Virus record (IMG/VR): IMGVR_UViG_3300002835_000007
Coordinates: 62,001 to 126,000 of that record
Reading direction: 5' to 3' (one strand)
DNA: 64,000 bases
Made by a program: the position numbers and the translations under genes. This document shows, piece by piece, positions 16,020 to 41,709 of this stretch. The notes under the pieces are model-generated. The model was not told the DNA's origin, did no database searches, and worked only from the letters and a program-made list of their open reading frames with translations. Numbering within the stretch: position 1 is the first letter of the stretch; each line of letters starts with the position of its first letter.

Positions 16020-16082
16020 GGTAGGTTGGAGTCTACTCTTCTGAAACTTGTTAAGTCAGCACGTATCTCTTTCAAACCTACA
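16020..16082 (-). ncRNA. dispersed sRNA-like element copy 1
   Basis: AGAGUAGACUCC core, CUGA...UCAG hairpin, promoter TTAG-N20-TACATTTG on minus strand. Confidence 0.6.
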
Positions 16083-16294
16083 ATACAAATGTAGGTATAA
16101 TAAATTTAATATCCTAATAAAAAAAATTTTTTTATTAATTATTTTTTTATTATATTACACACGCACATATGTACACGTGTACATTTATAGAATAGTGGTA
16201 TTAAAATTTTTTTTAATTATTTTTTATAAAGTAGTAGGATATTAAAAAAGTTTATATATCTTTGTAGGGTATTAATCAATTAAAACAATTACAT

Positions 16295-17011
16295 ATGAGT
16301 TTGGTATTTAAACACAAAGACACTATTCAAGTTGTTACGTTAGCAACAACAAAGAATGACAAAATTGAATCTAATAAGAAACGTAAGATAGTACAAACGT
16401 ACACGTTTTCTTATAAGCAATTTGAGTTAGTTAAGAAACGTTTTGAAACGAATGAAGCAATTGGCATGAAAAACTTTTTTAGTAACGCAGATAGCAATTG
16501 TTTGGATTGTCCTTTCAATTCTTATGGCAAATGTTATACACATAAATTTAATCAATACGTTGGTTTTATTTCATCTTTAAAAAGTGTATTTAGAAAGTTT
16601 GGTAGTATAGACAATATACCTAACTTTGATATTTCAATGTTAGACAAAGTTACCAAAATGAGCAAAGGTACTTATGTACGTTTCGGAACGTATGGTGAAC
16701 CAAGTTTGCACCCAATTGAATTAATTCGTTCTATGGTAAAAGTATGCGACAATTGGACGGGTTATACGCACCAATGGAATAAAACTAATTTAGGTGATTA
16801 TTTTATGGCAAGTACGCATACAACAAGTGAGCAACAAAGTGCTGAAATTTTAGGTTATAGGTCGTTTGTAGCAACTGAAAATAAGTTAGGGTATGTTGGT
16901 TGCCCAGCGAGTAAAGAAATGGGTTATAAGTCGAGTTGTAGTGCTTGTAATTTATGTAGTGGAAAGTTAGGAACTAAAACAAATAAAAGTATAGAAATTA
17001 TCCTACATTAA
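16295..17011 (+). CDS. Cys-rich conserved phage protein (possible Fe-S/metal-binding, Gp88-like)
   Basis: CLDCP...CY, RFGTYGEP, TGYTHQW, CPAS...CSACNLC. Confidence 0.6.
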   Translation: MSLVFKHKDTIQVVTLATTKNDKIESNKKRKIVQTYTFSYKQFELVKKRFETNEAIGMKNFFSNADSNCLDCPFNSYGKCYTHKFNQYVGFISSLKSVFRKFGSIDNIPNFDISMLDKVTKMSKGTYVRFGTYGEPSLHPIELIRSMVKVCDNWTGYTHQWNKTNLGDYFMASTHTTSEQQSAEILGYRSFVATENKLGYVGCPASKEMGYKSSCSACNLCSGKLGTKTNKSIEIILH

Positions 17012-17111
17012 TGTAGGGTAATTTTTTTTAAAACTTTTTATATAAAGTAGTAGGAAATTAAAAAAGAATGTTTATATTTGTAATGTATTAATCAATTAAA
17101 TAAAATAAATT

Positions 17112-17471
17112 ATGGGACGTTATTATTCGGGTGACATTGAAGGAAAGTTTTGGTTTGCACTACAATCTTCGGATTGTGCAGATAGGTTTGGTGTAAGTGG
17201 ACAACAACCAAACATATTAGAGTACTATTACGAAGAAAGTGATTTAGAAGGTGTGGAAGAAGAAATTGCTAATATTGAGCAAAGTTTGGGTGAACAAATA
17301 AAAGTCATAGAAGACTTTTTTAGAACAAACAATGGTTACAATGATAGTATGTTGGCAGAGGCAAATATTACCACAAGTGAATTAAGTGATTACGCAGATT
17401 TATGTTTGGGTATACAAATAAGGGATTGTATAAAAGAAAATGGTGCTTGTCGTTTTGACGCAGAATGTTAA
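17112..17471 (+). CDS. conserved phage hypothetical protein
   Basis: MGRYYSGDIEGKFWFALQSSD; own promoter. Confidence 0.75.
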   Translation: MGRYYSGDIEGKFWFALQSSDCADRFGVSGQQPNILEYYYEESDLEGVEEEIANIEQSLGEQIKVIEDFFRTNNGYNDSMLAEANITTSELSDYADLCLGIQIRDCIKENGACRFDAEC

Positions 17472-17527
17472 AAAATTATCCCCTACTAAAATAGTAGGGG
17501 TTTTTGTTTTTAATTTTTATTTTTTTT

Positions 17528-17592
17528 ATATGGACGTGACGGAGTCTAGTCTTCCATTCCCACGGCACGTATCGATTATCAATCATCTACAA
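17528..17592 (-). ncRNA. dispersed sRNA-like element copy 2
   Basis: CCGU-GGGA-AUGG hairpin + AGACUAGACUCC; promoter CTTG-N20-TACATTTG. Confidence 0.65.
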
Positions 17593-17742
17593 TACAAATG
17601 TAGAAATAATAAATTAGATATGCAAGAAAAAAGTGATTAAAAATAAAAATAATTTTTTTTTCATTATTTTATATAAAAAGTTTGGAAATTAAAAAAAAAG
17701 CGTTACATTTGTAATGTATTAATAATCTAAAAAACAAATAAG

Positions 17743-18627
17743 ATGAACACACAAGAAAAAGTACAAGAAATTTTAAAGTCTAATGGATTAGATTTTACAA
17801 TTGAAAAAGCACCTATGATGGCTTTAAATTCTAATGGTATCTATGTACCAAGTGAGTATTTCGGTTTGATTAATTCAAGCACGAATGAAGTGATTAACAC
17901 CGTAAAAGAGGGTTATACGGTATCTCAAAACGAAGAGGTTGTTGAGTTGGTTATGCGTGGAATTGAACCTTTCGGAAACGATATTCAAGTTACCAAAGGT
18001 GGTGCGTTGAATGGTGGACGCAAAGTGTTTTTACAACTTGCTATCAATGGTGACGGCAAAGTTAATGGTGACACTATTAAGAAGTATATTACTATCGTGG
18101 ATAGTAATGACGGCAGTACGGGTCTATCGGTAGGTATTGGTGATTTAACTATGAGTTGCAGTAACCAATTTTTTAAGTTCTACAAAAGTGGACAATCTAA
18201 ATTTCGTCATACGGCAAGTTTGGAACGTAGAATCAAAGAAATTCCTTTCCTTATTGAAACGGCTTTATCTGAATCATTAAGACAAATTGAAATCTACAAT
18301 CAATTTGCAAGTACGCAAGTTTCACGTGATTTGGCACACAAAATGGTTAAACACTTATTAGGGTTTGACAAAGTGTATACAAGTGTAAAAGACTTGTCAG
18401 ATAAGTCTACACGTAGTATAAACAAAATGGATGCTTTATACAACGCTATTGAACGTGAAATGAATAGCAAAGGTGACACGTTGTGGGGTTTACATAGTGG
18501 AATTACATATTACACTACACACGAATTGTCAGCACCAAAACGTGACAATGGTAAAGTTGAAACTTTGTTACAAGGAACGGGTTACAATATGAACCAAGCA
18601 AGTTTGGAATTTGCTTTAAATTACTAA
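17743..18627 (+). CDS. DUF932 (DUF945/LGT_TIGR03299-like) domain protein
   Basis: LDFTIEK.P, Y.V.QNEE, L.GGRKVF, S.DGS, C.NQ, RHT. Confidence 0.75.
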   Translation: MNTQEKVQEILKSNGLDFTIEKAPMMALNSNGIYVPSEYFGLINSSTNEVINTVKEGYTVSQNEEVVELVMRGIEPFGNDIQVTKGGALNGGRKVFLQLAINGDGKVNGDTIKKYITIVDSNDGSTGLSVGIGDLTMSCSNQFFKFYKSGQSKFRHTASLERRIKEIPFLIETALSESLRQIEIYNQFASTQVSRDLAHKMVKHLLGFDKVYTSVKDLSDKSTRSINKMDALYNAIEREMNSKGDTLWGLHSGITYYTTHELSAPKRDNGKVETLLQGTGYNMNQASLEFALNY

Positions 18628-18738
18628 CAAAGTTACAAGGGGGTTATCAACACCCCCTTGTAAATAACTTTATTTGCAAAGGTCGAATTTATTTTGTACC
18701 TTTGCAAATTTTTTTCTTATATGGTAAAAAAAATATAA

Positions 18739-18800
18739 GGTAGGTTGGAGTCTACTCTTTCAAGATTTCCCTCGACCCGTTTCGGTTATCACCACCAACA
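18739..18800 (-). ncRNA. dispersed sRNA-like element copy 3
   Basis: UCGAGG-GAAA-UCUUGA hairpin + core; promoter TTTG-N20-TACCTTTG. Confidence 0.65.
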
Positions 18801-18932
18801 AAACAAAGGTAGGGATAATATATTTAAAAAACAAACTTTTGTTGCATAAAAAAAAATAATTATTTTCTCACAAAATAGTTGCAGAATTAAAAATAATGTT
18901 TATCTTTGTAGGGAACAATAAAACAAAACACA

Positions 18933-19472
18933 ATGAAAAATTTAAATGACGTAAGATTAATGGCAGAAACATTAATGACAAAACAATTCACGTTTAACAC
19001 GTACCATGGGGTTTATACATTGAGTGGTGAACAATTAGGTTATACGTTTAAGTTTGATAGTGCAAAACGTAGATTTGGTTGCTGTAGTTATGGTAAAAAA
19101 ACTATTGGTTTATCTATGCCACTATGTAATGAAAATTTAGATAAAATAGACACAAAGATTACTGACACTATGTTGCACGAATTGGCACACGCATTTTGTG
19201 TTCACGTGTATGGTGTAAGGGACGGAAGAGGTCATGGGTACAATTGGCAACATATTGCAAAACAAATTGGTTGTGACGCTAAAAGATGTTTTAGTAGTGA
19301 TAGTGTTAATTTACCTAAATCAAAATATACTTTGTTATGTGAGAGTTGTGGTAAAGAAACACCAAAACACAAAGTGATTAGAAAGACTTATGCTTGTGCT
19401 AAATGTTGTGATGAACATAACAACGGAAAATTCAGTTATGATTATCAATTAAAATTAGTTACGAATTATTAA
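18933..19472 (+). CDS. SprT-like zinc metalloprotease
   Basis: RFGCC, HELAH, GHG..W, C-terminal CxxC...CxxC. Confidence 0.85.
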   Translation: MKNLNDVRLMAETLMTKQFTFNTYHGVYTLSGEQLGYTFKFDSAKRRFGCCSYGKKTIGLSMPLCNENLDKIDTKITDTMLHELAHAFCVHVYGVRDGRGHGYNWQHIAKQIGCDAKRCFSSDSVNLPKSKYTLLCESCGKETPKHKVIRKTYACAKCCDEHNNGKFSYDYQLKLVTNY

Positions 19473-19477
19473 AAAAG

Positions 19478-19510
19478 ATTTGCATAAGTGAAAACTTATG
19501 CTTATCTTTG
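19478..19510 (+). promoter_or_regulatory. promoter with hairpin-forming spacer (representative of a family in 19-39 kb)
   Basis: TTT-GCATAAG-tgaaaa-CTTATGC-TTATCTTTG; same sequence near 22609, 23870, 34067. Confidence 0.75.
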
Positions 19511-19532
19511 ATTAAACAAAACAATAAAAGTT

Positions 19533-19763
19533 ATGAAAGATTTATTTGAAACACCAGAGTTGATACCAAACGAAGTACAAGCAATATTGGAATCATTTGA
19601 TGAGGATAGTGGAAACACCTATTTTGAGTTAGATAGGATATTGAGTGAGATAGAACCATTGGGTTATACCTTTGATTACTATTTGGACGCAGAACCATAT
19701 GGGTTAAGACCTATGGGTATGGAATTGGAAGAGTTAGAGGGTTGGGAACATATTAATGATTAA
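19533..19763 (+). CDS. hypothetical acidic protein
   Basis: DLFETPELIP...GYTFDYYLDAEPY. Confidence 0.75.
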   Translation: MKDLFETPELIPNEVQAILESFDEDSGNTYFELDRILSEIEPLGYTFDYYLDAEPYGLRPMGMELEELEGWEHIND

Positions 19764-20025
19764 TGTTATGAAAATAGTTAAAAGTTGTTTACGTAGTACT
19801 GACGATATAAAATACGAGAGGGTATTAGAAACAAGTACACACATTTATTTTTATCCAATGGGCGACCACAAAGATAAAAAATTATTTGCTAAAAAACATA
19901 ATAGGGTTATGAATCTAATTGCCGAGGGTGATTATGTTGATAATGAGATAATGGAAATTTTTGCAAGTGGGAATTATAGTTGGGTAAGTAAGAAATTTGA
20001 AAATAAATTTGGAAAATTGAAATAG
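19756..20025 (+). CDS. hypothetical protein
   Basis: overlapping ORF. Confidence 0.65.
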   Translation: MINVMKIVKSCLRSTDDIKYERVLETSTHIYFYPMGDHKDKKLFAKKHNRVMNLIAEGDYVDNEIMEIFASGNYSWVSKKFENKFGKLK

Positions 20026-20063
20026 TTTATTTATCTTTGTTGAAACAATTAAAAACAAATATT

Positions 20064-20903
20064 ATGAGAAATGAATTTAACAATTTAGTAGAAACTTTAA
20101 AACGTTGGGACTTGTATCAAATAGGTGATGAAGTTGATATGGCGTTGACAGATTTGTCTGATAAGATAGCAGAAGTTGAAAAACGTATTGAATGTGTTAA
20201 ACGTACTAATGTTGATAGTCACGAGATACTATTTACTAATCAAGTTAAATTGGAAGAAAGTATTGGGTATGATAATGTAGAGATACTACAAAGAAGTGTT
20301 ACTGATATTAACATTGCATTAGATTTAACCATTAATGAACCAATAGAGTGTAATTGGTATGGTTTATTCGAAGAACCAAAAGAAGAAATAGAGGATAAAT
20401 TTAAACCTAGAAGTGTAGCAGAATATGTTGCAACATTACCCAAGGAAGAACCAAAGGTATTAATACCAAAAGATAGTATTGTTGAGTGGAAAGAAACAAG
20501 ACAATATTATAGTGTTAATGGTGGTGCTAAAGCGAGAGTAACCGAAGACTATACAACGGAACACGAAAGTAACGATAATTGTGTTAAAGTTGAATGGTTG
20601 GATGAAAAAGCAAATAACCAACAAAATGGTGGCTATTTTAGAGATATGTTTAAAGAAGACTTTGAGTTACCAAGTGTACCAACTTTTTTATGTTATTCAG
20701 ATGATAACCATAATATTGTAAAAGACATTATTGCGAAGTTAAAAGTAATTGATGTTGACGGAGAAACTATGCAGTATATCTTAAAGGAAGTTGGTATGGA
20801 AGACCAAATGTTAAGGCAACTAATAATGAGTAGTACTGAAAGTAATACAAAAGATTTGTTGGAAGAGAAACGAATTTTGAGTAACCAAGGTAAATTAGTT
20901 TAA
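20064..20903 (+). CDS. hypothetical protein
   Basis: start moved to ATG downstream of promoter. Confidence 0.75.
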   Translation: MRNEFNNLVETLKRWDLYQIGDEVDMALTDLSDKIAEVEKRIECVKRTNVDSHEILFTNQVKLEESIGYDNVEILQRSVTDINIALDLTINEPIECNWYGLFEEPKEEIEDKFKPRSVAEYVATLPKEEPKVLIPKDSIVEWKETRQYYSVNGGAKARVTEDYTTEHESNDNCVKVEWLDEKANNQQNGGYFRDMFKEDFELPSVPTFLCYSDDNHNIVKDIIAKLKVIDVDGETMQYILKEVGMEDQMLRQLIMSSTESNTKDLLEEKRILSNQGKLV

Positions 20904-20993
20904 AATAAAATTAAAAAGATTGGATGAATGTTATTGTTTATCCAATCTTTATTCTTATATTTGTTAAACAAACCAATTAAAACTTTAGAACCT

Positions 20994-21188
20994 ATGGATT
21001 ATAGTATGTATTTATTTAGCAACCTTATCAAATTTTATGACAAGGAATTTGCTGACGCTTGTTATGACGAGCAATGGGATGATTTGCCAAGTTTATATGA
21101 TGAGTATGACAAAAGCAAATTCAATGTTGACACCAAAGGTGAATACGAATGTATGGAAAATTTCTTAAAAGATAAGTACAACAAATAA
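20994..21188 (+). CDS. hypothetical protein
   Basis: start moved to ATG 20994. Confidence 0.65.
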   Translation: MDYSMYLFSNLIKFYDKEFADACYDEQWDDLPSLYDEYDKSKFNVDTKGEYECMENFLKDKYNK

Positions 21189-21264
21189 TTTAATAATAAT
21201 CCAATTTATATTTGGTAGATTGGATTATTATTCTTATATTTGTTAAACATTAAAAATAAAGATT

Positions 21265-21702
21265 ATGGGAAGTTTTAGTTGGAACAAAGCAGATGAATTA
21301 ACGAACACTGAAAATGTTGCTTATGGTACACCTTTTAAATTCTTAATACCAAAAGAATTTGGTGGTGGGTTTATCAAAGATTACTATCAAGATTATGGTG
21401 AACTAGGAACAAAAGAAATTAGTGGTGAACCTAAATACGATATGTATGAACTATTAGCATTTTGGAACAATGCAGAGGATTTGAAATTTGAGGGTGAATA
21501 TCCATTGATGAAACAAATTGATGAACATACTGATTACAATAGAAGTAAAGGTATTGACATTGGTTGTTACGATGAACAAATATTAAAACTTAAATACCCT
21601 TTAAAATTAGTTTCAGCTTCATTCAAAGGTACGTATGAAGATTTGGAGACTTGTAGTTTAGGTGACCCCGACCAAGGGTTTTTTCCAAGAAGAAGAAATT
21701 AA
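21265..21702 (+). CDS. conserved phage hypothetical protein
   Basis: MGSFSW...Y.DYG...D.YELLA.WN...DPDQG. Confidence 0.75.
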   Translation: MGSFSWNKADELTNTENVAYGTPFKFLIPKEFGGGFIKDYYQDYGELGTKEISGEPKYDMYELLAFWNNAEDLKFEGEYPLMKQIDEHTDYNRSKGIDIGCYDEQILKLKYPLKLVSASFKGTYEDLETCSLGDPDQGFFPRRRN

Positions 21703-21785
21703 AAATAATTTAAAAATAACCTATCAAATATTTGGTAGGTTATTTTATTTTTACTATATTTGTATTGTAATCAAAAACAAACATT

Positions 21786-22202: not shown

Positions 22203-22283
22203 TTTAAAATAAAATAACAAAAGATTTGGATAATCGAAATATTATCCTTATCTTTGTTTCACAAACAAATTAAAACTAATATT

Positions 22284-22592: not shown

Positions 22593-22667
22593 AATAAATT
22601 AAAAAAAGATTTGCATAAGTGAAAACTTATGCTTATCTTTGTTTCACAAACAAAAACAATAAGAGTT

Positions 22668-23261: not shown

Positions 23262-23292
23262 CCCACTTTTTTTGTGCGTGTAAAAAAATAAA

Positions 23293-23343
23293 AGGCACGT
23301 TGGAGTCTACTCTTCCATTCCCACGGCACGTCTAACTTGACAA
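23293..23343 (-). ncRNA. dispersed sRNA-like element copy 4
   Basis: CCGU-GGGA-AUGG + core; promoter CTTG-N20-AATCTTTG. Confidence 0.6.
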
Positions 23344-23475
23344 TACAAAGATTGCAATAATAATTGACATATGCAAGTAAAATAGCAAAAAAAATAATTT
23401 TATTTTTTTTTAATAAAAGTGTTGTGGGAATGGAAATAATTACTATCTTTGTAGAGAACAATTAAACAAACGATT

Positions 23476-27762: not shown

Positions 27763-27830
27763 GGTTGCCAATGTATGGACGTGTTGGAGTCTAGTCTTCC
27801 ATTCCCACGGCACGTCTAACTGATTGACCT
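27763..27830 (-). ncRNA. dispersed sRNA-like element copy 5
   Basis: CCGU-GGGA-AUGG + AGACUAGACUCC; promoter TTAG...TACATTTG. Confidence 0.65.
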
Positions 27831-27929
27831 TACAAATGTAAGATAAAAAAAATTAATATCCTAACAAAAAAAGTTTTTTTATTTAAAAAAGATTTATTAT
27901 CTTTGTTGAAACAAATTAAATTAAAAGTT

Positions 27930-31635: not shown

Positions 31636-31711
31636 GGGACAAAAGTAATCATTATTTTTCACATAACAAAATAATTTTGTTATTTATATTCATTCTAAAT
31701 AATTTCATAAC

Positions 31712-31770
31712 GTTCGCATATGGGCGTGACGGAGTCTACTCTTCTACTCTTGTAGCACGTCCACCGACAA
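31712..31770 (-). ncRNA. dispersed sRNA-like element copy 6
   Basis: CUAC-AAGA-GUAG + core; promoter CTTG-N20-AATCTTTG. Confidence 0.6.
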
Positions 31771-31869
31771 TACAAAGATTGTAATAATATTTTTAAAAAA
31801 CAAGTAAAATAAATTTTTTTATTTAAAAAGTTTTTCTTATATTTGCAAAACAATCTAAATTAACAAGCA

Positions 31870-32393: not shown

Positions 32394-32669
32394 ATGGCAA
32401 ATTTTAAACCACAAGTAACGTATATGACAAGTGAAAGTCTACACGATTACAGAGTAGAAAGATATGGTGTAAGAACTGAATACACAACAAAGAAATTCAA
32501 TACTTATACTGAATTAAAGAAAGCATTAAAAGATTATATTTTGGATAATCATATTGGTGAAGACCCAGTTTTTGTTTCACGTAGCAGACGTGGTGAATGG
32601 GGAGAATGGTTTGAGAAGTGGGAAAAAATTAATGGTAAACCTAAAATAACTAAACAAGGGTGGCAGTAG
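32394..32669 (+). CDS. hypothetical protein
   Basis: VSRSRRGEWGEWFE.W. Confidence 0.7.
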   Translation: MANFKPQVTYMTSESLHDYRVERYGVRTEYTTKKFNTYTELKKALKDYILDNHIGEDPVFVSRSRRGEWGEWFEKWEKINGKPKITKQGWQ

Positions 32670-32690
32670 TGTCACCTTTTTTTTATGGTT

Positions 32691-32761
32691 GGTTGCCGTT
32701 CACGTATAGACGTGTCGGAGTCTACTCTTCTACTCTCGCAGCACGTACCTTAATTGTACAA
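32691..32761 (-). ncRNA. dispersed sRNA-like element copy 7
   Basis: CUGC-GAGA-GUAG + core + CACGU-CUAU-ACGUG. Confidence 0.65.
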
Positions 32762-32898
32762 TACAAAGATTGCAATAATATTTGACATATGCAAGCAAAA
32801 AGTGAAAATAATTTTATTTTTATTTTATTACAAAATAGTTGCAGAATTAAAAATAATGTTTATCTTTGTAGGGTATTAATCAATTAAAATAAAACACA

Positions 32899-33917: not shown

Positions 33918-34079
33918 ATGGAAAAGGAAATTAAAAAAGTATGGGAAGAATTGATTAGTCTTTATGACATCGCAGACCAATTAGAAGACAATGGACAAGA
34001 CGCAGAAGAAGTTAGAATAAAACTAAATAATATTACTGATTTTTTTGTAAAAAACTTTGAAAAAGATTTGCATAAGTGA
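33918..34079 (+). CDS. hypothetical protein
   Basis: start moved to 33918. Confidence 0.6.
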   Translation: MEKEIKKVWEELISLYDIADQLEDNGQDAEEVRIKLNNITDFFVKNFEKDLHK

Positions 34080-34126
34080 AAACTTATGCTTATCTTTGTT
34101 TTATAAATCAATTAAAATAAAATAGT

Positions 34127-34501: not shown

Positions 34502-34532
34502 AAATTAAAGGGTATTACACCCTTTTTTTATT

Positions 34533-34606
34533 GGTTGCCGTTGTTCACGTATGGACGTGTTGGAGTCTACTCTTCTACTCTCGTAGCACGTCTGAATCAT
34601 TGACAT
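34533..34606 (-). ncRNA. dispersed sRNA-like element copy 8
   Basis: GACGUG-[CUAC-GAGA-GUAG]-AAGAGUAGACUCCAA-CACGUC. Confidence 0.65.
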
Positions 34607-34738
34607 AACAAATATCGGAATTATAAATCAATTATGCAAGAAAAAAGTAAAAATAATTTTATTTTTATTTTATATAAAATGTTGCACAATTAAAAAAGAA
34701 TGTTTATATTTGTACTATAATCATTAAAACAAAACATT

Positions 34739-35083: not shown

Positions 35084-35158
35084 AAAAAGTTAAAAAAGGT
35101 TTGCATAATCAAAAGATTATGCTTATCTTTGTTTCATAATCATTAAAACATACACAAG

Positions 35159-35353: not shown

Positions 35354-35431
35354 AAAAAGTTAAAAAAGGTTTGGAATTGTAAAAACAATTCCTTACCTTT
35401 GATAAAAGAAATCAATTAAAAAACAAACATT

Positions 35432-35659: not shown

Positions 35660-35870
35660 AATATAGTAGGAAAGGGTTTATATGAGAGGAAAATACTCTG
35701 CTGAACCTCGTAGACTTGGTAACGATACATCATTGCATAATTAGTTCCCCTTTCCGTATTGTTTATCACTAATTATGCTTTGACAAACCTTTCATATTGT
35801 AAATGACTTAGAGGAATGTTTCGTTAGAGGTGTTGTTGGGAATAGGGTTTACCTATTCCCAATTCCTATT
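35660..35870 (+). ncRNA. candidate pseudoknotted ncRNA
   Basis: three 8-10 bp long-range helices plus terminal hairpin; no ORF. Confidence 0.4.
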
Positions 35871-35899
35871 TATACAACTTTGTTTTTTCATTTTTATTT

Positions 35900-35964
35900 T
35901 GTTCACGTATGGACGTGTTGGAGTCTACTCTTCTACTCTCGCAGCACGTACCTTAATCGTACAT
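35900..35964 (-). ncRNA. dispersed sRNA-like element copy 9
   Basis: CUGC-GAGA-GUAG + core; promoter GTTG...TATCTTTG. Confidence 0.65.
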
Positions 35965-36100
35965 AACAAAGATAGTAATAATATTGACTTGTGCAACAAA
36001 AAAAGTAAAAAAAAATAATTTATTTATTTTTCACAATATAGTAGGAAATTAAAAAAGAATGTTTATCTTTGTAAGGTATTAATCAATAAAACAAATTACA

Positions 36101-36721
36101 ATGGGTTACACAACTGATTTTAGTGGTAGATTTGAACTTAACAAGGAGTTAAGTCCAAAGATGGAACAATACTTAAAATTGTTCAACGAAACACGCAGAA
36201 TGGAAAGAAACACTGATGAAGTGTTTGGAGTACAAGGTGAGTTTTACGTATTTGGTGGTGGAAGTTTTGGACAAGACCACGAAGACAATGTAGTAGATTT
36301 TAATGAGCCACCAAGCACTCAACCAAGTCTTTGGAATCAATGGACACCTAGCGATGACCGAATGGGTATTGAGTGGGATTGTGGTGAGAAGTTTTATAAC
36401 TATACTGAATGGTTAGTTTATCTTATTCACAAAATTCTAGCACCGAATGGTTATGTCCTTAATGGAGTGGTAGAATATAGTGGTGAGGAAGTTGGTGATG
36501 TTGGTGAAATAGTTGTTGTTGATAATAGAGTATTTGTCAGAGAGAAATACCAAGATGGCGACAATGGGGAAAGTACACCACAAAACGCACAAAAGTTTGG
36601 CAGAGTTAATGGCAACTATGTTTATATCAAAGACTTTATGAGAACTGATGTAGTGTTGATTTTAGATGGTACTGATAACGAATTACCTAATGGGGTTGTA
36701 AAGTTATTAGAAAATAACTAA
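36101..36721 (+). CDS. conserved phage hypothetical protein
   Basis: MGYTTDFSGRF, QPSLWNQW, EKFY.Y.EWL.YLI, GY.LNG. Confidence 0.8.
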   Translation: MGYTTDFSGRFELNKELSPKMEQYLKLFNETRRMERNTDEVFGVQGEFYVFGGGSFGQDHEDNVVDFNEPPSTQPSLWNQWTPSDDRMGIEWDCGEKFYNYTEWLVYLIHKILAPNGYVLNGVVEYSGEEVGDVGEIVVVDNRVFVREKYQDGDNGESTPQNAQKFGRVNGNYVYIKDFMRTDVVLILDGTDNELPNGVVKLLENN

Positions 36722-37177
36722 AACATTTTAAAAAAAGATTTGGATAATCGAAAGATTATCCTTATCTTTGTTTCACAAACAAATTAAAACAAAAAGTTAT
36801 GTTAGGCAAAATCGTTTATTTAGGAATCTTATTAGGAGGATTAGCAGTAATCAAATTAGTGTGTAATTATTTAGATAAAAGAAATGAAATTTAAAGAAAT
36901 AACCTTAACCCAGCACGAAATGCAACAAGCATTAAAGAGTAGTGTTCACAAGTCTAAAAAAGCGTTTCAACGCAAAGATAAACATAAAAAGAATTATATT
37001 AACAAGTTAATGCAAGAGGATTATGTATGATAAAGAAATAATGTTGATTGAAATCTATTATGGGGTTTCAATCAACGCAAAAAACTAAATTGTGTTTGTT
37101 TAGTGTTTTGATTATAACGAGGAAGTGGTTGCCGAATGGTTGCCACTTTTTTTATGCAGTAACGCACACACGAAACA

Positions 37178-37230
37178 TATACACGCAACGGAGTCTACTC
37201 TTCTACTCTCGTAGCACGTCTTACTGACAT
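37178..37230 (-). ncRNA. dispersed sRNA-like element copy 10
   Basis: CUAC-GAGA-GUAG + core; promoter GTTG...TATCTTTG. Confidence 0.6.
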
Positions 37231-37367
37231 AACAAAGATAGAAATAATTTTGATATATCCAACACAAAAATGAAAATAATTTAAAAAAAATTAAATGCTA
37301 ATTATAGTATGTTGTGGCAACAAGATTCAATGCTTATATTTGTAGTATAACTTTAAAACAATATATT

Positions 37368-37607
37368 ATGGAATGCACATTAGAAAATTTAGAGAGAGTA
37401 TTTAAAATCATTATTGAGCAACACGCAGACAATAATGAACACGCAGAATTTGACGATGAAAGTGATTTAGTTGATGTAGTCAAAAGAGTAGTTGAATGGT
37501 TGGATGAAGAACCTACATTTTGTTGTCAAAATTGTGGTGGTGGGTTTACACGTGATGAAATGGTATTTGGTGATGATGTAGATTTATGTAAAGATTGTGC
37601 AAAATAA
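37368..37607 (+). CDS. zinc-ribbon protein
   Basis: CQNC...CKDC; start moved to 37368. Confidence 0.65.
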   Translation: MECTLENLERVFKIIIEQHADNNEHAEFDDESDLVDVVKRVVEWLDEEPTFCCQNCGGGFTRDEMVFGDDVDLCKDCAK

Positions 37608-37667
37608 ATTTGCATAATCAAAACATTATGCTTATCTTTGTTAAACAAACAATTTAAAACTTATATT

Positions 37668-37991
37668 ATGTCAAGCAAAAACTTAAACAAAGATTTAGAA
37701 CAATTAGAAAAACAAGTTTACCACTACTTTAATGAGTTGTTGGAGAAACAAGAAGAAATAGTAATCTTTGATGAATGTGATTTAGAACACGACACACCCG
37801 ATGATTACCTTGAAATGCGTAATGATATTACGGGAAACGTGTTTGATGTCCACCCACTAAAAGTAACCCAAAATGGAATACTTGTAGTTGAAGCAGACGG
37901 AAGTTTTGTAAGACACTTGATTAAGTTGCAAGATTTATCAAGCACACAAGACAAAATTACCCTAATAGAATTAATGGAAAATAGTTTGTAA
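37668..37991 (+). CDS. hypothetical protein, tandem paralog 1
   Basis: VIFDE.DLE.DTPD.YLE.R...TGNVFDVHPLKV shared with next gene. Confidence 0.75.
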   Translation: MSSKNLNKDLEQLEKQVYHYFNELLEKQEEIVIFDECDLEHDTPDDYLEMRNDITGNVFDVHPLKVTQNGILVVEADGSFVRHLIKLQDLSSTQDKITLIELMENSL

Positions 37992-38069
37992 AAAACTATA
38001 AAAAGATTTGGATAAGTGAAAACTTATCCATATCTTTGTTGTATAAATAAACAATTAAAATAAACTAAA

Positions 38070-38423
38070 ATGAGAATAAGTGCTTTAAAAAGAGATATAG
38101 ATGTTTTAAAAACACATATCCAAATGACATTCGAGGAAATGTTATATCAACAAAAAGAATTTGTTATCTTTGATGAAAAAGATTTAGAAAATGACACACC
38201 CGATAATTACCTAGAAATTAGAGATAAAGAAACGGGCAACGTATTTGATGTACACCCACTAAAAGTTCTTAAAGTTGGTAATTACTACGATATTGAAGTA
38301 GTAACGGCAGACGGAAAATTTACAAAACATTCAATTAAAATGTGGGATTTATCAATAGAGGATAGAATTAATTTAATTGAATTAATGGACAAATGTTTGG
38401 TAGATAATGATAACGAAATATAA
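38070..38423 (+). CDS. hypothetical protein, tandem paralog 2
   Basis: same motif as 37668-37991. Confidence 0.75.
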   Translation: MRISALKRDIDVLKTHIQMTFEEMLYQQKEFVIFDEKDLENDTPDNYLEIRDKETGNVFDVHPLKVLKVGNYYDIEVVTADGKFTKHSIKMWDLSIEDRINLIELMDKCLVDNDNEI

Positions 38424-38485
38424 ACAAATAAACTTGCATAAGTCAAAACTATTCACTATCTTTACGGAAACAAATAATTAATACT

Positions 38486-38869
38486 ATGTATACTTTAATC
38501 GACACAAAGAAAAACAAAGAACTTGCAACATTAAATTCTAAACAAGAATTGATTGACAAAGTTAATTTAATCGCTAATGACGATAAATTTAGAATCGCAC
38601 CAATCAACACTATTGAAGATTGTTTTGAGTATATCAATCAATATACATTGGACTATGATTTAGTCAAAGATAGTGAAGTTAATTCGTTTATCGAAACTTA
38701 TGGTATTGAAGTTGATGAAAATGAATCAGACCACTATGTTGAACTAATGATGGACGACCACAAATGTATAAAATGGAAAGGTAAAGAATATTATATAGGT
38801 GAAAATCTAAATTTAGATGAAGTCGAAGATAGTGTTTATATGATAATAGCATATTCACTACACGTATAA
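38486..38869 (+). CDS. hypothetical protein
   Basis: own promoter. Confidence 0.7.
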   Translation: MYTLIDTKKNKELATLNSKQELIDKVNLIANDDKFRIAPINTIEDCFEYINQYTLDYDLVKDSEVNSFIETYGIEVDENESDHYVELMMDDHKCIKWKGKEYYIGENLNLDEVEDSVYMIIAYSLHV

Positions 38870-38952
38870 AATAAATTAAAATAAATGGTACTATCGTTTG
38901 GTAGTACCATTTATATTTACTATCTTTACATAAACAAATAAACATAAACACA

Positions 38953-39249
38953 ATGAGAACAATTACTGAAAAAGCAATCGAAAAGTTTTTAAATGCTGAA
39001 ACTTTTAAAAATGGTAACACAAGTGTAGAAGTTTTGCCTAACGTAACAATACTAAAACTATTTGGCAACGCAATCGCTTATCAATACAACGACCCCGAAA
39101 GAACCTTATCAATTACTAATTGTGGGTATGAAACGGCAACAACAAAAGAAAGGTTAAATGGTTTACCTAACGTAAAAATAAATCAAACCAAAGGTAAATG
39201 GTTTCTGAATGATGTTGAATGGGACGGAAATTTAATTGATGTAAATTAA
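38953..39249 (+). CDS. conserved phage hypothetical protein
   Basis: NT.V...L.GN.IA...G..T.TTKERLNGL. Confidence 0.75.
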   Translation: MRTITEKAIEKFLNAETFKNGNTSVEVLPNVTILKLFGNAIAYQYNDPERTLSITNCGYETATTKERLNGLPNVKINQTKGKWFLNDVEWDGNLIDVN

Positions 39250-39404
39250 TAACTAAATGGTAGGTGCGACCTATGTACATATTTCTGTACATTGGTTGCC
39301 ACCACACCCCCTAATTTAATCAATTAGTTGTTATCAAATAAAAAATATAATGTTTGAATAATAATACTTACAATAAGTAAATTATAAGACAAAAAAAAAT
39401 GAGA

Positions 39405-39665
39405 CTACTTTGGTAGTCTCATTCTTGGGTTGGTATACCCAGTGAGTTCGTTAAAGCCCCACTTGATGTGAGTCTTTTCGCCATAAACGGCAGACGAACT
39501 TTTGTATGGTTGGTGAACGTAATCGTTCAACATTTCCCATTTGGTCATTCCCATACCATAGCCGTTATAACGATATGTTCTGAAGAATGCAACGCCATCT
39601 TGACGTATACCAACTTGAACTGAACGTCCATACGTATCAGTTCCGTGAAAACAATTTGCTTCCAT
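39405..39665 (-). CDS. hypothetical protein
   Basis: start moved to MEANC; minus-strand promoter at about 39723-39755. Confidence 0.7.
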   Translation of the reverse strand: MEANCFHGTDTYGRSVQVGIRQDGVAFFRTYRYNGYGMGMTKWEMLNDYVHQPYKSSSAVYGEKTHIKWGFNELTGYTNPRMRLPK

Positions 39666-39999
39666 AACAAAAAGAAAAAAAATAAGTAAGAAAAAGAACT
39701 TTTGTCCCTCATTTGGACGATACAAAGATAAACATAATTTTTAAATAACCAAACATTTTTTAATCTTTTTTTATTTTTTTTTATTCCTATCTAATCTTAT
39801 TTATAACATTAATCTTTATACTATTCTTATTCTTTTTTTGCTTGTATTGTTGCTTGTAATAAACTTTAAATACTAAACCAATACATAATACCAAAACAAC
39901 TTTAAAACGTCTTAAAACGAATTAAAATAAGAGCAAAAAATAATTTAAAAATAATTCACTTTTTTCTTGCATATCTAAAATCTAATTACGATATTTGTA

Positions 40000-40068
40000 T
40001 TGTCAATGATTGATAATCGAGACAAGTTGCTAACCAAAGCAAAAGACTAGACTCCGACACGTCTATAC
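40000..40068 (+). ncRNA. dispersed sRNA-like element copy 11 (inverted)
   Basis: UUGCU-AACCAA-AGCAA + AA + GACUAGACUCC; promoter CTTG...GATATTTG. Confidence 0.6.
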
Positions 40069-40125
40069 TTTTTTAACGTATGCCAATAAAAAAAAGAGTT
40101 CATTTAATGAACCCTTTTCAGTCGG

Positions 40126-40545
40126 TTAAAGACTTGCACAAGTCGGACCTAACCCACGTTCGATGGATTGTGCGTCCGTTAACGTGCGTCCACAACGTAT
40201 GCAATTGCCCGTATGCATAACTTGAACCTTCTCATCCAACAAGTCGAACTTGCTTTGTTCAACCCTTTCAAGCACCCAACAAATTGCTGTTGCCGATGGC
40301 GAGTTAACCACTTGCCCTTTTTGGTAAATCTTACCCTTGAAATAAGACCCCAAACGAACGAATTTTTGGTACTCTTGTTCAACGCTAATATGCGTGTACC
40401 AATTGCCCTTAAATTTAGAACGAGAGATAGCATACGTGTAGTCTTTGCCCGTAGCAATAGACTTAATAGTGAAATCAGAACCACTATTGTTTTTTTCAGC
40501 CTTGATAACTGAAAAAAGAGCCGAAGATGAAATAATGTGTGACAT
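40126..40545 (-). CDS. DUF6011-like zinc-finger protein
   Basis: CIRCGRTLT...SIERGLGPTC. Confidence 0.75.
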   Translation of the reverse strand: MSHIISSSALFSVIKAEKNNSGSDFTIKSIATGKDYTYAISRSKFKGNWYTHISVEQEYQKFVRLGSYFKGKIYQKGQVVNSPSATAICWVLERVEQSKFDLLDEKVQVMHTGNCIRCGRTLTDAQSIERGLGPTCASL

Positions 40546-40681
40546 AAGGAAAAAATTTAAATGAATAACTTATTACAAAGATAATACTTTTTTTCATTCC
40601 CACAATACCTTAACGAAAAAAAAAATAAAATTATTTTTAATAATTGTTTGCATATATCATTTCTATTATCTATCTTTGTTT

Positions 40682-40756
40682 TGTCAATGATTGATAGTCG
40701 AGACAAGTCGCTAAGCAAAGTGAGAGAGTAGACTCCGACACGTCCATACGTGAACG
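40682..40756 (+). ncRNA. dispersed sRNA-like element copy 12 (inverted)
   Basis: UCGCU-AAGCAA-AGUGA + GA + GAGUAGACUCC; promoter TTTG-N20-TATCTTTG. Confidence 0.65.
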
Positions 40757-40783
40757 AACTATACTAAATAAAAAAGGGGATTT

Positions 40784-41002
40784 TTAAACCCCCAATTTTT
40801 CAAAGATAGGACGACTAATTTCGTTTCTAATAAGCATAGGTATTAGATACTCAAATAAGTCGTCAGATTCAATCTTTAGACGTTCATACTTAACTTTTGG
40901 TATGTCAGCCCTAACGTCATTTCCAACTTGTTCGGCAAAGAATTTTTCACCTTCCCTAACTAATAGACAATTTCCAACTTGTCTTACAACTACACGTAAC
41001 AT
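40784..41002 (-). CDS. hypothetical protein
   Basis: own minus-strand promoter. Confidence 0.65.
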   Translation of the reverse strand: MLRVVVRQVGNCLLVREGEKFFAEQVGNDVRADIPKVKYERLKIESDDLFEYLIPMLIRNEISRPIFEKLGV

Positions 41003-41132
41003 AAAGAACGATTTTGAATTACCCTACAAAGATAACATTAATTTTGATTCCCACAATACCCTAACCAAAAAAAAATTAATATAAACGAAAAAAGTCCATA
41101 AGGTATAACCCTATGGACAGATTTCTGTACAT

Positions 41133-41456
41133 TTAGTACTCAACTTCAACGTCACGTGCTTGTGCGTGCACGTATTCCAAGAACTTGTCGTCATTCAAGA
41201 CGATAGGTTCGTGCCACACGATTTCGTGTTCGGTATACGTATACCGATACCCCTCGTTAGACTCGTCTTGTAGCAGACGTTTGAAAGCGTTTATTGAGCG
41301 TTCCTCGTCATACATAAGGTAATCAACATTAAGGTTGACTTGAAAGATTTTACCACCTTTCTTTTTCCAATGTTGTGGACATTCCCCTTGACCATCCCAC
41401 GTGTGAGCAGCATAGTTTTCCTCAACTTGTGCGTAAATGTTTACCAATGTTTTCAT
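41133..41456 (-). CDS. conserved phage hypothetical protein
   Basis: Q..ENY.AH.WDG.GECPQ.WK.KGG. Confidence 0.75.
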   Translation of the reverse strand: MKTLVNIYAQVEENYAAHTWDGQGECPQHWKKKGGKIFQVNLNVDYLMYDEERSINAFKRLLQDESNEGYRYTYTEHEIVWHEPIVLNDDKFLEYVHAQARDVEVEY

Positions 41457-41658
41457 AACAAAAAAGTATTAAAAAATAAATAAAAAAAGAACTAACGCCC
41501 AACCGAAGTACATATCATATCCTCAATTGAACAATACAAAGATAGGGATAAATTTTAAATAACCAAAACTTTTTTCACTTTTTTTTTTCAAAGTTATTAA
41601 CACTAAATTGTTAATAACTTTTTTTAAAAAAAAACTTGCATATTAAAAAAATAAAACC

Positions 41659-41709
41659 CAGGTTGGAGTCTACTCTTCCATTCCCACGGCACGTACCTTA
41701 ATTGTACAC
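41659..41709 (-). ncRNA. dispersed sRNA-like element copy 13
   Basis: CCGU-GGGA-AUGG + core; promoter CTTG-N20-TATATTTG. Confidence 0.6.

What the first reader, a model, noticed from the sequence alone, without database searches (positions are those of the whole stretch)
16020..41709. 13-copy dispersed family of promoter-driven structured small RNAs with an invariant core and covarying hairpin
Seen: 13 intergenic elements, with cores near 16028, 17541, 18747, 23302, 27786, 31731, 32717, 34562, 35920, 37190 and 41665 (minus strand) and 40043, 40724 (plus strand). In transcript sense they share one layout: variable 5-20 nt leader, ACNNG, hairpin, exactly 2 purines, then GA(G/C)UAGACUCC. The 12-mer AGA(G/C)UAGACUCC is present in all 13. 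The hairpin changes sequence but keeps pairing: CUAC-GAGA-GUAG, CUGC-GAGA-GUAG, CUAC-AAGA-GUAG, CCGU-GGGA-AUGG, UCGAGG-GAAA-UCUUGA, UUGCU-AACCAA-AGCAA, UCGCU-AAGCAA-AGUGA, CUGA..UCAG. G-U wobbles and GNRA loops occur only in this orientation. Every copy lies just downstream of a Bacteroidota-type promoter ([C/T/G]TTG or TTAG, N19-21, [T/A/G]AnnTTTG) and has no ORF. Inference: a highly amplified early sRNA of ~60-120 nt. It could be a protein decoy or anti-defence RNA (analogous to RNA anti-CRISPRs or ToxI mimics) or a constant scaffold with a variable guide leader. I do not recognise it as a known family.
Basis: partly seen in the sequence, partly recalled or inferred. Interest (0 to 1): 0.92.

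Follow-up and report, generated by a model that had tools for sequence, protein, structure and literature searches.

The report
Multicopy structured small RNA of Bacteroidota phages
The 13 repeats look like real genes for a small folded non-coding RNA that many phages of Flavobacteria-type bacteria carry, that no RNA catalogue lists, and whose job is unknown.

Summary
The 12-mer AGA(G/C)UAGACUCC occurs exactly 13 times (0 expected). Each copy lies 30-46 nt downstream of a Bacteroidota-type promoter (TTG/TAG-N19-20-[T/A/G]AnnTTTG). Each follows a hairpin that ends one nucleotide before the core, and no reading frame stays open across the copies. Eleven copies point against the surrounding small genes.

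The element is not private to this phage. I found over 150 instances in more than 100 IMG/VR contigs. It is also in two isolates, Tenacibaculum phage Larrie (4 copies) and Flavobacterium phage immuto (1 diverged copy). It is almost absent from 185,579 bacterial species genomes.

The hairpin covaries and is rich in G-U pairs in this orientation only. A closing helix between the 5' and 3' flanks has moderate support. GUAGACUCC is nearly invariant even when copies are retrieved without using it.

There is no Rfam match, no tRNA call and no literature hit. Tests for rRNA mimicry, a guide leader and a CRISPR-repeat origin found nothing; the CRISPR-repeat test was indirect and stays inconclusive.

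Best reading: a stand-alone, host-transcribed, dosage-amplified structured sRNA whose invariant junction binds a conserved partner. Transcription and the partner are both inferred. I rate it a new RNA family of high interest.

The parts
16008..16116 (-). sRNA copy 1. Promoter 16116-16086 (TAG-N20-TACATTTG), hairpin P2 16059-16041 (CUGA/UCAG, 11-nt loop), core 16039-16028, tail AACCUACCCUAAACUUUUUUU.
   Evidence: The 5' GUAGGUU can pair with the 3' AACCUAC.
17521..17625 (-). sRNA copy 2. Promoter 17625-17595, P2 17565-17554 (CCGU-GGGA-AUGG), core 17552-17541 (AGACUAGACUCC variant), tail GUCACGUCCAUA.
18727..18834 (-). sRNA copy 3. Promoter 18834-18804, P2 18775-18760 (UCGAGG-GAAA-UCUUGA), core 18758-18747, tail AACCUACCUUAUAUUUUUUUU. 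This is the short form that is common in other phages.
23282..23376 (-). sRNA copy 4. Promoter 23376-23346, P2 23326-23315 (CCGU-GGGA-AUGG), core 23313-23302, tail AACGUGCCUUUUAUUUUUUU.
27766..27863 (-). sRNA copy 5. Promoter 27863-27833 (TAG-N20-TACATTTG), P2 27810-27799, core 27797-27786 (AGACUAGACUCC variant).
31711..31803 (-). sRNA copy 6. Promoter 31803-31773, P2 31755-31744 (CUAC-AAGA-GUAG), core 31742-31731, P1 GGACGUG/CACGCCC.
32697..32794 (-). sRNA copy 7. Promoter 32794-32764, P2 32741-32730 (CUGC-GAGA-GUAG), core 32728-32717, P1 ACGUG/CACGU. The transcript runs into the upstream gene's terminator at 32656-32679.
34507..34639 (-). sRNA copy 8. Promoter 34639-34609, P2 34586-34575 (CUAC-GAGA-GUAG), core 34573-34562, P1 GACGUG/CACGUC. 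A terminator-like hairpin with a U-run lies on this strand at 34525-34507.
35900..35996 (-). sRNA copy 9. Promoter 35996-35967, P2 35944-35933 (CUGC-GAGA-GUAG), core 35931-35920.
37170..37262 (-). sRNA copy 10. Promoter 37262-37233, P2 37214-37203 (CUAC-GAGA-GUAG), core 37201-37190, P1 ACGUGC/GCGUGU (two G-U pairs).
39967..40075 (+). sRNA copy 11. Promoter 39967-39997, optional 5' hairpin in the leader, P2 40027-40042 (UUGCU-AACCAA-AGCAA), core 40044-40055 (AGACUAGACUCC variant).
40648..40756 (+). sRNA copy 12. Promoter 40648-40678, P2 40708-40723 (UCGCU-AAGCAA-AGUGA), core 40725-40736.
41645..41742 (-). sRNA copy 13. Promoter 41742-41712, P2 41689-41678 (CCGU-GGGA-AUGG), core 41676-41665, tail AACCUGGGUUUUAUUUUUUU.

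Best explanation
Each element is a stand-alone gene for a small structured non-coding RNA. In this window the RNA would be about 55-130 nt. The host sigma-A RNA polymerase would transcribe it from a Bacteroidota-type promoter inside the phage's block of small, individually promoted genes, probably the host-takeover genes.

The proposed fold has three parts:
- A closing helix P1 formed by the 5' and 3' flanks. Its sequence varies.
- A variable hairpin P2, mostly capped by GNRA-type loops.
- An almost invariant single-stranded or mini-hairpin junction, R-A-GAG-UAGA-CUC-C.

The invariant junction is proposed to bind, in trans, a conserved macromolecule. The most likely partner is a host protein or RNP that the phage sequesters or redirects early in infection. 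The 13 copies would then serve as gene dosage, and they spread together with the intergenic promoter/terminator cassettes.

Shown here: the repeat, its promoter linkage, strand-specific covariation of P2, the lack of coding capacity, and wide distribution restricted to phages.

Inferred: that the RNA is transcribed, where it ends, that P1 and P3 form, that it acts in trans, and what it binds.
For: Real and non-random:
- 13 exact cores against 0 expected.
- All 13 have a promoter at fixed spacing.

An RNA, on this strand:
- P2 is 100% paired, and 3 of its 4 pairs show changes on both sides. Slid controls pair at 27-42%.
- RNAalifold predicts P2 on its own.
- G-U pairs outnumber A-C pairs 132 to 33.

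Closing helix P1:
- 79% paired in the subset that shares the window's geometry.
- Each element's own 3' flank pairs with its 5' flank better than flanks swapped between elements: -6.36 against -5.75 kcal/mol, sd 0.16.
- Different sequences fill the same role: GACGUG/CACGUC, GUAGGUU/AACCUAC, GGUAG/CUACC, AUUCGGG/CCCGAAU, GGGUA(C)GGGC/GYCCUACCC.
- In L034:2891-2958, P1 (GGACGUG/CACGUCC) encloses two hairpin+UAGACUCC modules.

Non-coding: no frame is open across the copies. Short forms in other phages contain no AUG.

An independent gene:
- It carries its own promoter and often a U-run right after CCUACC.
- It occurs in either orientation relative to its neighbours, but mostly antisense.

Selection on the sequence:
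- GUAGACUCC is kept in 43 of 49 class I copies retrieved through the hairpin alone.
- It is kept in most copies retrieved through the 3' tail alone.

Widespread and multicopy elsewhere:
- More than 100 viral contigs.
- Three copies within 2-5 kb in L022, L034 and L095.
- Four copies in Tenacibaculum phage Larrie.

Not a host RNA: only 6 hits in 185,579 species genomes, all on short MAG contigs.
Against: - There are no expression data of any kind. The only Flavobacteriia-phage transcriptome paper I opened (phi14:2) concerns a phage that lacks the element in the 50 kb examined.
- No partner was identified. No protein family co-occurs across the different phage groups.
- P1 changes register between classes and is only 2-4 bp in many copies.
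- P3 (GAG/CUC) is mostly invariant, so it cannot show covariation. The G-to-C variant present in 3 window copies breaks it. An alternative pairing, GUAG with CUAC, has some support: 2 of 4 GUAU variants carry the compensating GUAC.
- In the class I phage clade the element is single-copy, lies in the same sense as the flanking genes, and has no recognisable promoter of either type. That would fit a cis-acting role.
- The copy number here could partly be a by-product of duplicated intergenic cassettes.
Confidence: 0.55

Rival explanations
1. It is a small catalytic or ligand-binding RNA: a new class of self-cleaving ribozyme or an aptamer. The invariant nucleotides would form the active site or binding pocket at a junction or pseudoknot, and the stems would be mere scaffolding.
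For: The conservation pattern is typical of ribozymes and aptamers. Junction nucleotides are invariant while the helices P1 and P2 covary. A large insertion is tolerated inside the P3 loop with GAG/CUC kept (L147 and L150). The element is compact, about 45-55 nt. It occurs in phage intergenic regions in either orientation, as many small ribozymes do. A pseudoknot is possible in which GUAG pairs with CUAC and stacks on P1.
Against: No Rfam ribozyme or riboswitch model matches, even at E-values up to 10. The hammerhead core (CUGAUGA...GAAA) is absent, because the CUGA in many copies lies in a covarying stem. It has its own promoter, often with a terminator directly after, and 13 copies. That fits a product RNA better than a processing site. 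There is no consistent downstream gene for a riboswitch to control.
Confidence: 0.12
2. It acts in cis as part of a mobile intergenic regulatory cassette. Antisense transcription from these promoters, or a protein bound to the DNA 12-mer, would insulate or time the neighbouring early genes. The repeats would also promote recombination and shuffling of gene cassettes, as PeSL elements do in T4-type phages. The RNA product itself would have no role.
For: The whole intergenic unit is repeated: upstream terminator, the element, an A/T-rich spacer, then the divergent promoter and start codon of the next gene. Eleven of 13 copies fire towards the upstream gene's terminator. The flanking genes are unrelated small ORFs, as in hyperplastic regions.
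Against: Cis-antisense or recombination roles do not require a 9-12-nt sequence to stay invariant across unrelated phages. They also do not require a hairpin that keeps pairing through G-U pairs on one strand only. In several phages the element lies in the same sense as its neighbours. The 12-mer is not palindromic, as most operators for dimeric DNA-binding proteins are.
Confidence: 0.13
3. It is an RNA mimic of a host RNA that disarms a defence system. Candidates are an RNA anti-CRISPR (a solitary CRISPR-repeat mimic), a pseudo-antitoxin for a type III toxin-antitoxin system, or a tRNA or rRNA fragment decoy. This is one specific form of the leading explanation.
For: A variable hairpin followed by an invariant tail is how CRISPR repeats of one subtype look. 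In two-module copies a hairpin is followed directly by the 8-nt UAGACUCC. The element has its own promoter and sits in many copies in a host-takeover region next to SprT/ArdC-like, DUF932 and PcfJ-like genes.
Against: The 18 specified bases around the core are virtually absent from 185,579 bacterial species genomes. Two metagenomic CRISPR arrays share only the 9-mer GUAGACUCC and nothing else (L226 and L180), which is about what chance would give. The copies are dispersed, not tandem. ARAGORN finds no tRNA. Similarity to E. coli 16S, 23S and 5S rRNA, as mimic or as target, is not above shuffled controls. The best result is a 7-mer shared with 5S loop E, p about 0.04 before correcting for 24 tests.
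Confidence: 0.1
4. It is a guide RNA: a constant scaffold carrying a variable leader that directs a phage or host effector to targets.
For: The 5' leaders differ between copies.
Against: Leader length runs from about 0 to 25 nt, and some relatives have essentially none (L039, L109). No complementarity beyond 11-14 nt of AT-rich chance matches exists elsewhere in the window. The Pfam and PHROGs scans of the 36 window ORFs I checked found no RNA-guided nuclease-like protein.
Confidence: 0.03

Closest known systems
Multicopy 'sibling' sRNA families such as Bacteroides FopS (Rfam RF04319)
   Same: Several paralogous small RNA genes sit in one Bacteroidota-associated genome. Each has its own TAnnTTTG-type promoter. 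The RNAs are short and structured.
   Different: There is no sequence or structure match. FopS scores 14 bits against a 56-bit threshold, and that weak hit lies on a neighbouring terminator. The family here is phage-encoded and virtually absent from bacterial genomes. It has a 9-12-nt invariant junction.
RNA anti-CRISPRs (Racrs; solitary CRISPR-repeat mimics on phages and plasmids). Named from my own knowledge.
   Same: Promoter-driven, non-coding hairpin-plus-tail units on a mobile element, sometimes in several copies. They would act as protein decoys.
   Different: No CRISPR repeat resembling the whole element was found. The element has a closing helix between its 5' and 3' flanks, which CRISPR repeats lack.
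Type III antitoxin RNAs (ToxI) and phage pseudo-ToxI. Named from my own knowledge.
   Same: Small RNAs, possibly pseudoknotted, that bind and neutralise a protein. Phages can carry mimics of them.
   Different: ToxI-type RNAs are tandem repeats of 34-45 nt processed by the toxin. The copies here are single units at least 680 bp apart, each with its own promoter. No host counterpart was found.
PeSL (promoter-early stem-loop) cassettes of T4-type phages. Named from my own knowledge.
   Same: Repeated intergenic promoter plus stem-loop units that flank small, shuffled early genes. The whole intergenic cassette is duplicated.
   Different: PeSLs point the same way as the genes and, as far as I know, are conserved mainly within related genomes. 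Here the element is mostly antisense, and its core is conserved across unrelated phage groups.
Processive antitermination RNAs (lambda nut boxA/boxB, HK022 put, rrn boxB-boxA). Named from my own knowledge.
   Same: A GNRA-type hairpin lies next to a conserved linear sequence, just downstream of a promoter. In class I phages the element sits in the same sense as a run of small genes.
   Different: In this window and in most Bacteroidota phages it is antisense. It is followed by a U-run or a terminator rather than by genes. The sequence does not resemble boxA.
Small self-cleaving ribozymes found in phage intergenic regions (hammerhead, twister, pistol, hatchet, HDV-like)
   Same: Size of about 50 nt, invariant junction nucleotides with covarying stems, phage context, and occurrence in either orientation.
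   Different: No Rfam model matches. The hammerhead core is absent. Cleavage has not been tested.

Membership tests
Any Rfam 15 family (4227 models) | Score at or above the family's gathering threshold, or at least a significant E-value on the RNA strand. | tested here: not met
   No match at gathering thresholds in the window or in 13 related loci. With E-values up to 10 on single elements, only chance hits appear, on neighbouring terminators or on the wrong strand.
FopS sRNA family (RF04319) | Match to the covariance model (gathering score 56 bits). | tested here: not met
   14.2 and 14.5 bits, lying on terminator hairpins outside the element.
tRNA / tmRNA / tRNA-like | A cloverleaf that ARAGORN can detect. 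| tested here: not met
   No tRNA or tmRNA in the window. None overlaps the element in 56 related loci, and there is no consistent linkage to tRNA genes.
RNA anti-CRISPR (Racr) | Sequence and structure resemble the CRISPR repeat of a CRISPR-Cas system in the host. | tested here: inconclusive
   The host genomes are not available. A scan of 185,579 species genomes for the core plus tail gave 6 single hits and no arrays. A metagenome scan for two cores at CRISPR-like spacing found two arrays that share only the 9-mer (L226, L180).
RNA anti-CRISPR (Racr) | A solitary repeat unit on a mobile element, with a promoter and no adjacent cas genes. | tested here: met
   The units are promoter-linked single copies in a phage. 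This feature alone is not specific to Racrs.
Type III antitoxin / pseudo-ToxI | Tandem direct repeats of about 34-45 nt. | tested here: not met
   The copies are at least 680 bp apart and each has its own promoter. Only rare relatives carry two modules inside one closing helix.
Type III antitoxin / pseudo-ToxI | A cognate endoribonuclease toxin that processes and binds the RNA. | not testable with these tools
   This needs the host genomes and biochemistry.
PeSL-type mobile regulatory cassette | A repeated promoter plus stem-loop unit that flanks small early ORFs. | tested here: met
   The whole intergenic cassette is repeated, including the divergent gene promoter.
PeSL-type mobile regulatory cassette | The promoter drives the adjacent genes in the sense orientation, and the element has no product of its own. 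| tested here: not met
   Eleven of 13 element promoters point away from the next gene and against the upstream gene. The core is conserved across unrelated phages.
nut/put-type antitermination RNA | Lies in cis at the start of an operon, in the sense orientation, upstream of terminators and genes. | tested here: not met
   In the window and in most Bacteroidota phages it is antisense and followed by a U-run or terminator. In class I it is in the sense orientation, so the question stays open for that clade only.
Hammerhead ribozyme | The conserved core CUGAUGA...GAAA...UH at a three-way junction. | tested here: not met
   The core is absent. CUGA, where present, pairs with UCRG and covaries to CUAC/GUAG, CCGU/AUGG and others. 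No Rfam hit.
Self-cleaving ribozyme (any class) | Site-specific self-cleavage. | not testable with these tools
   This needs in vitro transcription and a cleavage assay.
rRNA-fragment mimic or anti-rRNA sRNA | Local similarity or complementarity to conserved rRNA above chance. | tested here: not met
   Against E. coli 16S, 23S and 5S, no score exceeds shuffled controls. The exception is a 7-mer (AGAGUAG, 5S loop E 3' strand) at p about 0.04 before correcting for 24 tests. Flavobacteriia rRNA was not available.

The most novel reading that the evidence does not exclude
This would be a previously unrecognised class of phage RNA, and the novelty would lie in how it works. Either the invariant junction is a new catalytic or ligand-binding fold, or the RNA is a high-copy inhibitor or re-programmer of a conserved host machine. 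It would be used across many lineages of Flavobacteriia and other aquatic phages and delivered from up to 13 dedicated genes per genome.
Probability: 0.3. Interest if true: 0.9.

Novelty: categorically new. Interest (0 to 1): 0.78.

Why it matters
Very few phage-encoded small RNAs have a known function, and almost none are known for phages of Bacteroidota, a dominant group in oceans, lakes and guts. This RNA has a near-invariant 9-12-nt junction, a covarying hairpin and its own promoter. It reaches 13 copies per genome and occurs in more than 100 viral contigs, yet is virtually absent from bacterial genomes.

That pattern points to strong, shared selection on an RNA-level function during infection. 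Finding its partner could reveal a new way for phages to take over hosts or evade defences, or a new RNA fold.

Two cultured phages carry it, Tenacibaculum phage Larrie and Flavobacterium phage immuto, so the question can be tested directly. The family is also an immediate candidate for a new Rfam entry, which would stop the spurious small ORFs now annotated over it, such as immuto gp146.

Tried and rejected
1. Known RNA family. Four Rfam searches, ARAGORN, and a literature search by sequence and by topic found nothing. The one textual hit to GAGTAGACTCC is the synthetic GAGUA reference hairpin used in chemical-mapping constructs, which is a coincidence.
2. Close relatives among deposited phages. 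blastn of 7 kb of the window found none. Short-element queries found only immuto and Larrie.
3. Host RNA or prophage element. Only 6 hits on MAG contigs in 185,579 species genomes.
4. rRNA mimic or target. Not above shuffled controls.
5. Core as an antisense seed, or leaders as guides. No complementary sites in the window apart from the elements themselves.
6. Linkage to tRNA genes. None.
7. A co-occurring protein partner. ORF clustering over 89 loci gave only clade-specific families: small ORFs, a tail fibre, a GroEL-like protein, DUF932 and SprT-like. The genes next to the 13 copies are unrelated to one another.
8. The abundant early non-coding transcripts reported for Cellulophaga phage phi14:2 (bioRxiv 10.1101/2020.03.07.982082). 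The element is absent from the first 50 kb of that genome, which includes those intergenic regions.
9. CRISPR-repeat origin. Two arrays share only a 9-mer.
10. A small peptide. No frame is conserved.
11. A structural realignment from the covariance model R1. It was trained on an ungapped alignment and did not give one, so hairpin statistics came from my own scripts.
12. My own terminator script was too strict and is not used. One search is used instead.

Full report
**1. What is in the window**

The 12-mer GGAGTCTASTCT, which reads AGA(G/C)UAGACUCC in the proposed RNA sense, occurs exactly 13 times, against none in 100 dinucleotide-preserving shuffles. Allowing two mismatches adds no copy. A covariance model built later from 103 family members also finds only these 13.

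The window has about 29% G+C. Between about 13.8 and 39 kb it is packed with small ORFs on the plus strand. Several match PHROGs families of unknown function, DUF932 or an SprT/ArdC-like domain. Elsewhere there are ClpB-like, thymidylate synthase, PcfJ-like and HNH genes. The same sequence is present in IMG/VR contigs, the longest 128 kb.

Eleven of the 13 elements therefore point against the surrounding genes. Each sits between the terminator of the upstream gene and the divergent promoter of the next gene. The whole intergenic unit is repeated.

**2. Promoter, hairpin and coding capacity**

Every copy has T(T/A)G-N19-20-[T/A/G]AnnTTTG, and its TTTG ends 30-46 nt before the core. The strict Bacteroidota motif TTG-N18-22-TAnnTTTG occurs 71 times in the window against 9.6 expected, mostly on the plus strand. 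This is evidently the promoter type the phage uses for its own genes.

The hairpin P2 always ends one nucleotide before the 12-mer. In the window, 10 of 13 P2 loops are GNRA tetraloops (GAGA, GGGA, GAAA) and one more is AAGA.

No reading frame stays open through the core across the copies.

Terminator-like hairpins usable in the RNA sense follow some copies, for example at 34525-34507. Four copies (16028, 18747, 23302, 41665) instead have a U-run directly after the element.

**3. The family outside the window**

Most carry the complete element.
- Two further scans avoided the core. One used the 3' tail CCAACCTACCTTATAT and the other used the class I hairpin. Both recovered more copies.
- In Bacteroidota-type phages (class II) the consensus is: promoter, a leader of 0-25 nt, GGGC, P2, R, AGAGUAGACUCC, AAC, CUACC, UUAUAU(U)n. 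These loci are 6.5-fold enriched for the Bacteroidota promoter motif, 193 against 30. They often hold several copies within a few kb (L022, L034, L095). About 70% of copies are antisense to their neighbours.
- A second group (class I, about 50 contigs) has GGCCUGRYYYUGAAAUARRRUCGG-A-AGAGUAGACUCC-GYCCUAC. It occupies one orthologous locus of a related phage clade and lies in the same sense as the flanking small ORFs. That clade shows no enrichment of either promoter type.
- Two isolates carry the element. Flavobacterium phage vB_FspM_immuto has one diverged copy, antisense, with a 32-aa 'hypothetical protein' annotated over it. Tenacibaculum phage Larrie has four copies in otherwise ORF-free gaps. 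Three are antisense, and two form a convergent pair.
- A scan of 185,579 bacterial and archaeal species genomes gave six hits, all on short MAG contigs. The element is therefore essentially confined to phages.

**4. Structure**

P2 is solid:
- In 16 sequences that share the window's geometry it is 100% paired, and three of its four pairs change on both sides. Slid controls pair at 27-42%.
- RNAalifold predicts it on its own.
- Across 103 elements, a count that treats both strands alike gives 348 Watson-Crick, 132 G-U and 33 A-C pairs.

A closing helix P1 between the 5' and 3' flanks has moderate support:
- It is 79% paired in the subset.
- Each element's own 3' flank pairs with its 5' flank better than swapped flanks do: -6.36 against -5.75 kcal/mol, sd 0.16.
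- Quite different sequence pairs fill the same role in different lineages: GACGUG/CACGUC, GUAGGUU/AACCUAC, GGUAG/CUACC, AUUCGGG/CCCGAAU and GGGUA(C)GGGC/GYCCUACCC.
- In L034 a P1 of 7 bp encloses two hairpin+UAGACUCC modules.
- Its register differs between classes, however, and RNAalifold does not call it on the mixed set.

The core could fold in two ways:
- A mini-hairpin P3 (GAG-UAGA-CUC). The loop variants UAUA, UAAA and UGGU fit this, as do an A-to-G change that keeps a G-U pair and a large insertion inside the loop. The G-to-C variant found in three window copies breaks it.
- Pairing of GUAG with the downstream CUAC. Two of four GUAU variants carry the compensating GUAC.

I cannot decide between a three-way junction and a pseudoknot.

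When copies are retrieved without using the core, 43 of 49 class I copies still have AGUAGACUCC. GUAGACUCC is the most constant part.

**5. What it is not**

- It matches no Rfam family at gathering thresholds or at E-values up to 10. FopS scores 14 bits, on a terminator.
- It is not a tRNA.
- It shows no significant similarity or complementarity to E. coli rRNAs.
- Neither the core nor the leaders have complementary targets elsewhere in the window.
- It is not in tandem arrays.
- A metagenome search for cores at CRISPR-like spacing found two CRISPR arrays that share only the 9-mer.
- No protein family accompanies it across phage groups.
- Literature searches by sequence and by topic found no description.
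- Abundant early non-coding transcripts are reported for phi14:2, but the first 50 kb of that genome lack the element.

**6. Interpretation**

The best-supported reading is a family of independent small-RNA genes. The host polymerase would transcribe them from the host-takeover region of the phage, and they are amplified to 13 copies in this genome. The variable helices would hold an almost invariant junction in place.

Three facts argue that the junction is recognised in trans by a conserved macromolecule:
- The junction is conserved across unrelated phage groups.
- The element tolerates either orientation.
- It carries its own promoter and terminator.

A protein decoy or cofactor role is the most economical mechanism, but nothing here identifies the partner.

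Rivals that remain open:
- A new ribozyme or aptamer.
- A purely cis-acting regulatory or recombination cassette. This is more plausible for the single-copy, sense-oriented class I.
- A mimic of a host RNA, which its near-absence from bacterial genomes weakens.
- A guide RNA, which leader variability and the lack of targets make unlikely.

Transcription itself is inferred from the promoter motif and the strand-specific structure. It has not been observed.

**7. Verdict**

I rate it a new RNA family of high interest, and two cultured phages make it directly testable.

Noticed in passing
window 34070-34089, 35103-35122, 35373-35392, 36742-36761, 38009-38030 (plus strand): Short 8-9-bp hairpins with 4-nt A-rich loops (GAAA, AAAA) sit directly before TTATCTTTG or TTACCTTTG. 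The U-tract of a terminator-like hairpin therefore doubles as the -7 box (TAnnTTTG) of the next gene's promoter. This looks like a compact terminator-promoter fusion, or an operator within the promoter spacer.
   Followed up: no
window 7459-12364 (minus strand): Four adjacent paralogous ORFs of 479, 331, 331 and 479 aa. The two 479-aa proteins share 203 identical residues and the two 331-aa proteins share 147. The 479-aa and 331-aa types are also related. None has a Pfam or PHROGs match.
   Followed up: partly
window 17743-19472 and 45176-46399: DUF932, an SprT/ArdC-like metalloprotease and a PcfJ-like protein. This gene set is typical of plasmid leading regions and anti-restriction modules. 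DUF932 and SprT each lie directly beside an sRNA copy. DUF932 homologues also lie near the element in 7 other loci and in phage immuto.
   Followed up: partly
class I loci, e.g. L053, L061, L086, L011, L098, L119, L115 (upstream and downstream of the element): Two other repeated motifs. One is GTGTATAGCA(C) / (G)TGCTATACAC, 161 occurrences in 42 loci, often right after a GC-rich hairpin. The other is a long inverted repeat, AAAGTGTGACRWTAGCC...GGCTAAYGTCACACTTT. These may be the clade's own promoters, terminators or processing sites.
   Followed up: no
L128 (Tenacibaculum phage Larrie) 16790-16880, 17130-17150, 17440-17500, 18680-18730, 19300-19350, 19640-19670, 19820-19860: A repeated AT-rich motif (GTTAAAGTTTTGTTAAAAT / AACATTTCTTTAACA) occurs in the same ORF-free gaps that hold the sRNA copies. 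One 1.1-kb gap (19227-20364) has no annotated gene.
   Followed up: no
L127 19951-20049 (Flavobacterium phage immuto gp146, YP_010114537.1): A 32-aa 'hypothetical protein' is annotated on the opposite strand directly over the sRNA element. It is probably a spurious ORF call.
   Followed up: partly
L226 (metagenome contig ERZ773070 NODE-891) and L180 (AUXO015364049.1): Two CRISPR arrays whose repeats contain GUAGACUCC. L226 has a 36-nt repeat ending ...CCCCCUGGUAGACUCC with a 64-nt period. L180 has an AT-rich repeat of about 36 nt, AUUUAGAUAUGUAGACUCCGAGAGGRGAUGGAAAC. They share nothing else with the element, so the match is probably chance.
   Followed up: partly
L072 1781-1835 (348-kb IMG/VR contig): In one jumbo-phage contig the element lies inside a tRNA gene region, in the same orientation. 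tRNA-Lys is at 393-466 and five tRNAs are at 3224-3633.
   Followed up: no
window 42852-43529 (minus strand): An HNH/endonuclease VII-like ORF that also weakly matches PHROGs families annotated as Srd anti-sigma factor and 'decoy of host sigma70'. It lies just beyond the last sRNA copy.
   Followed up: no
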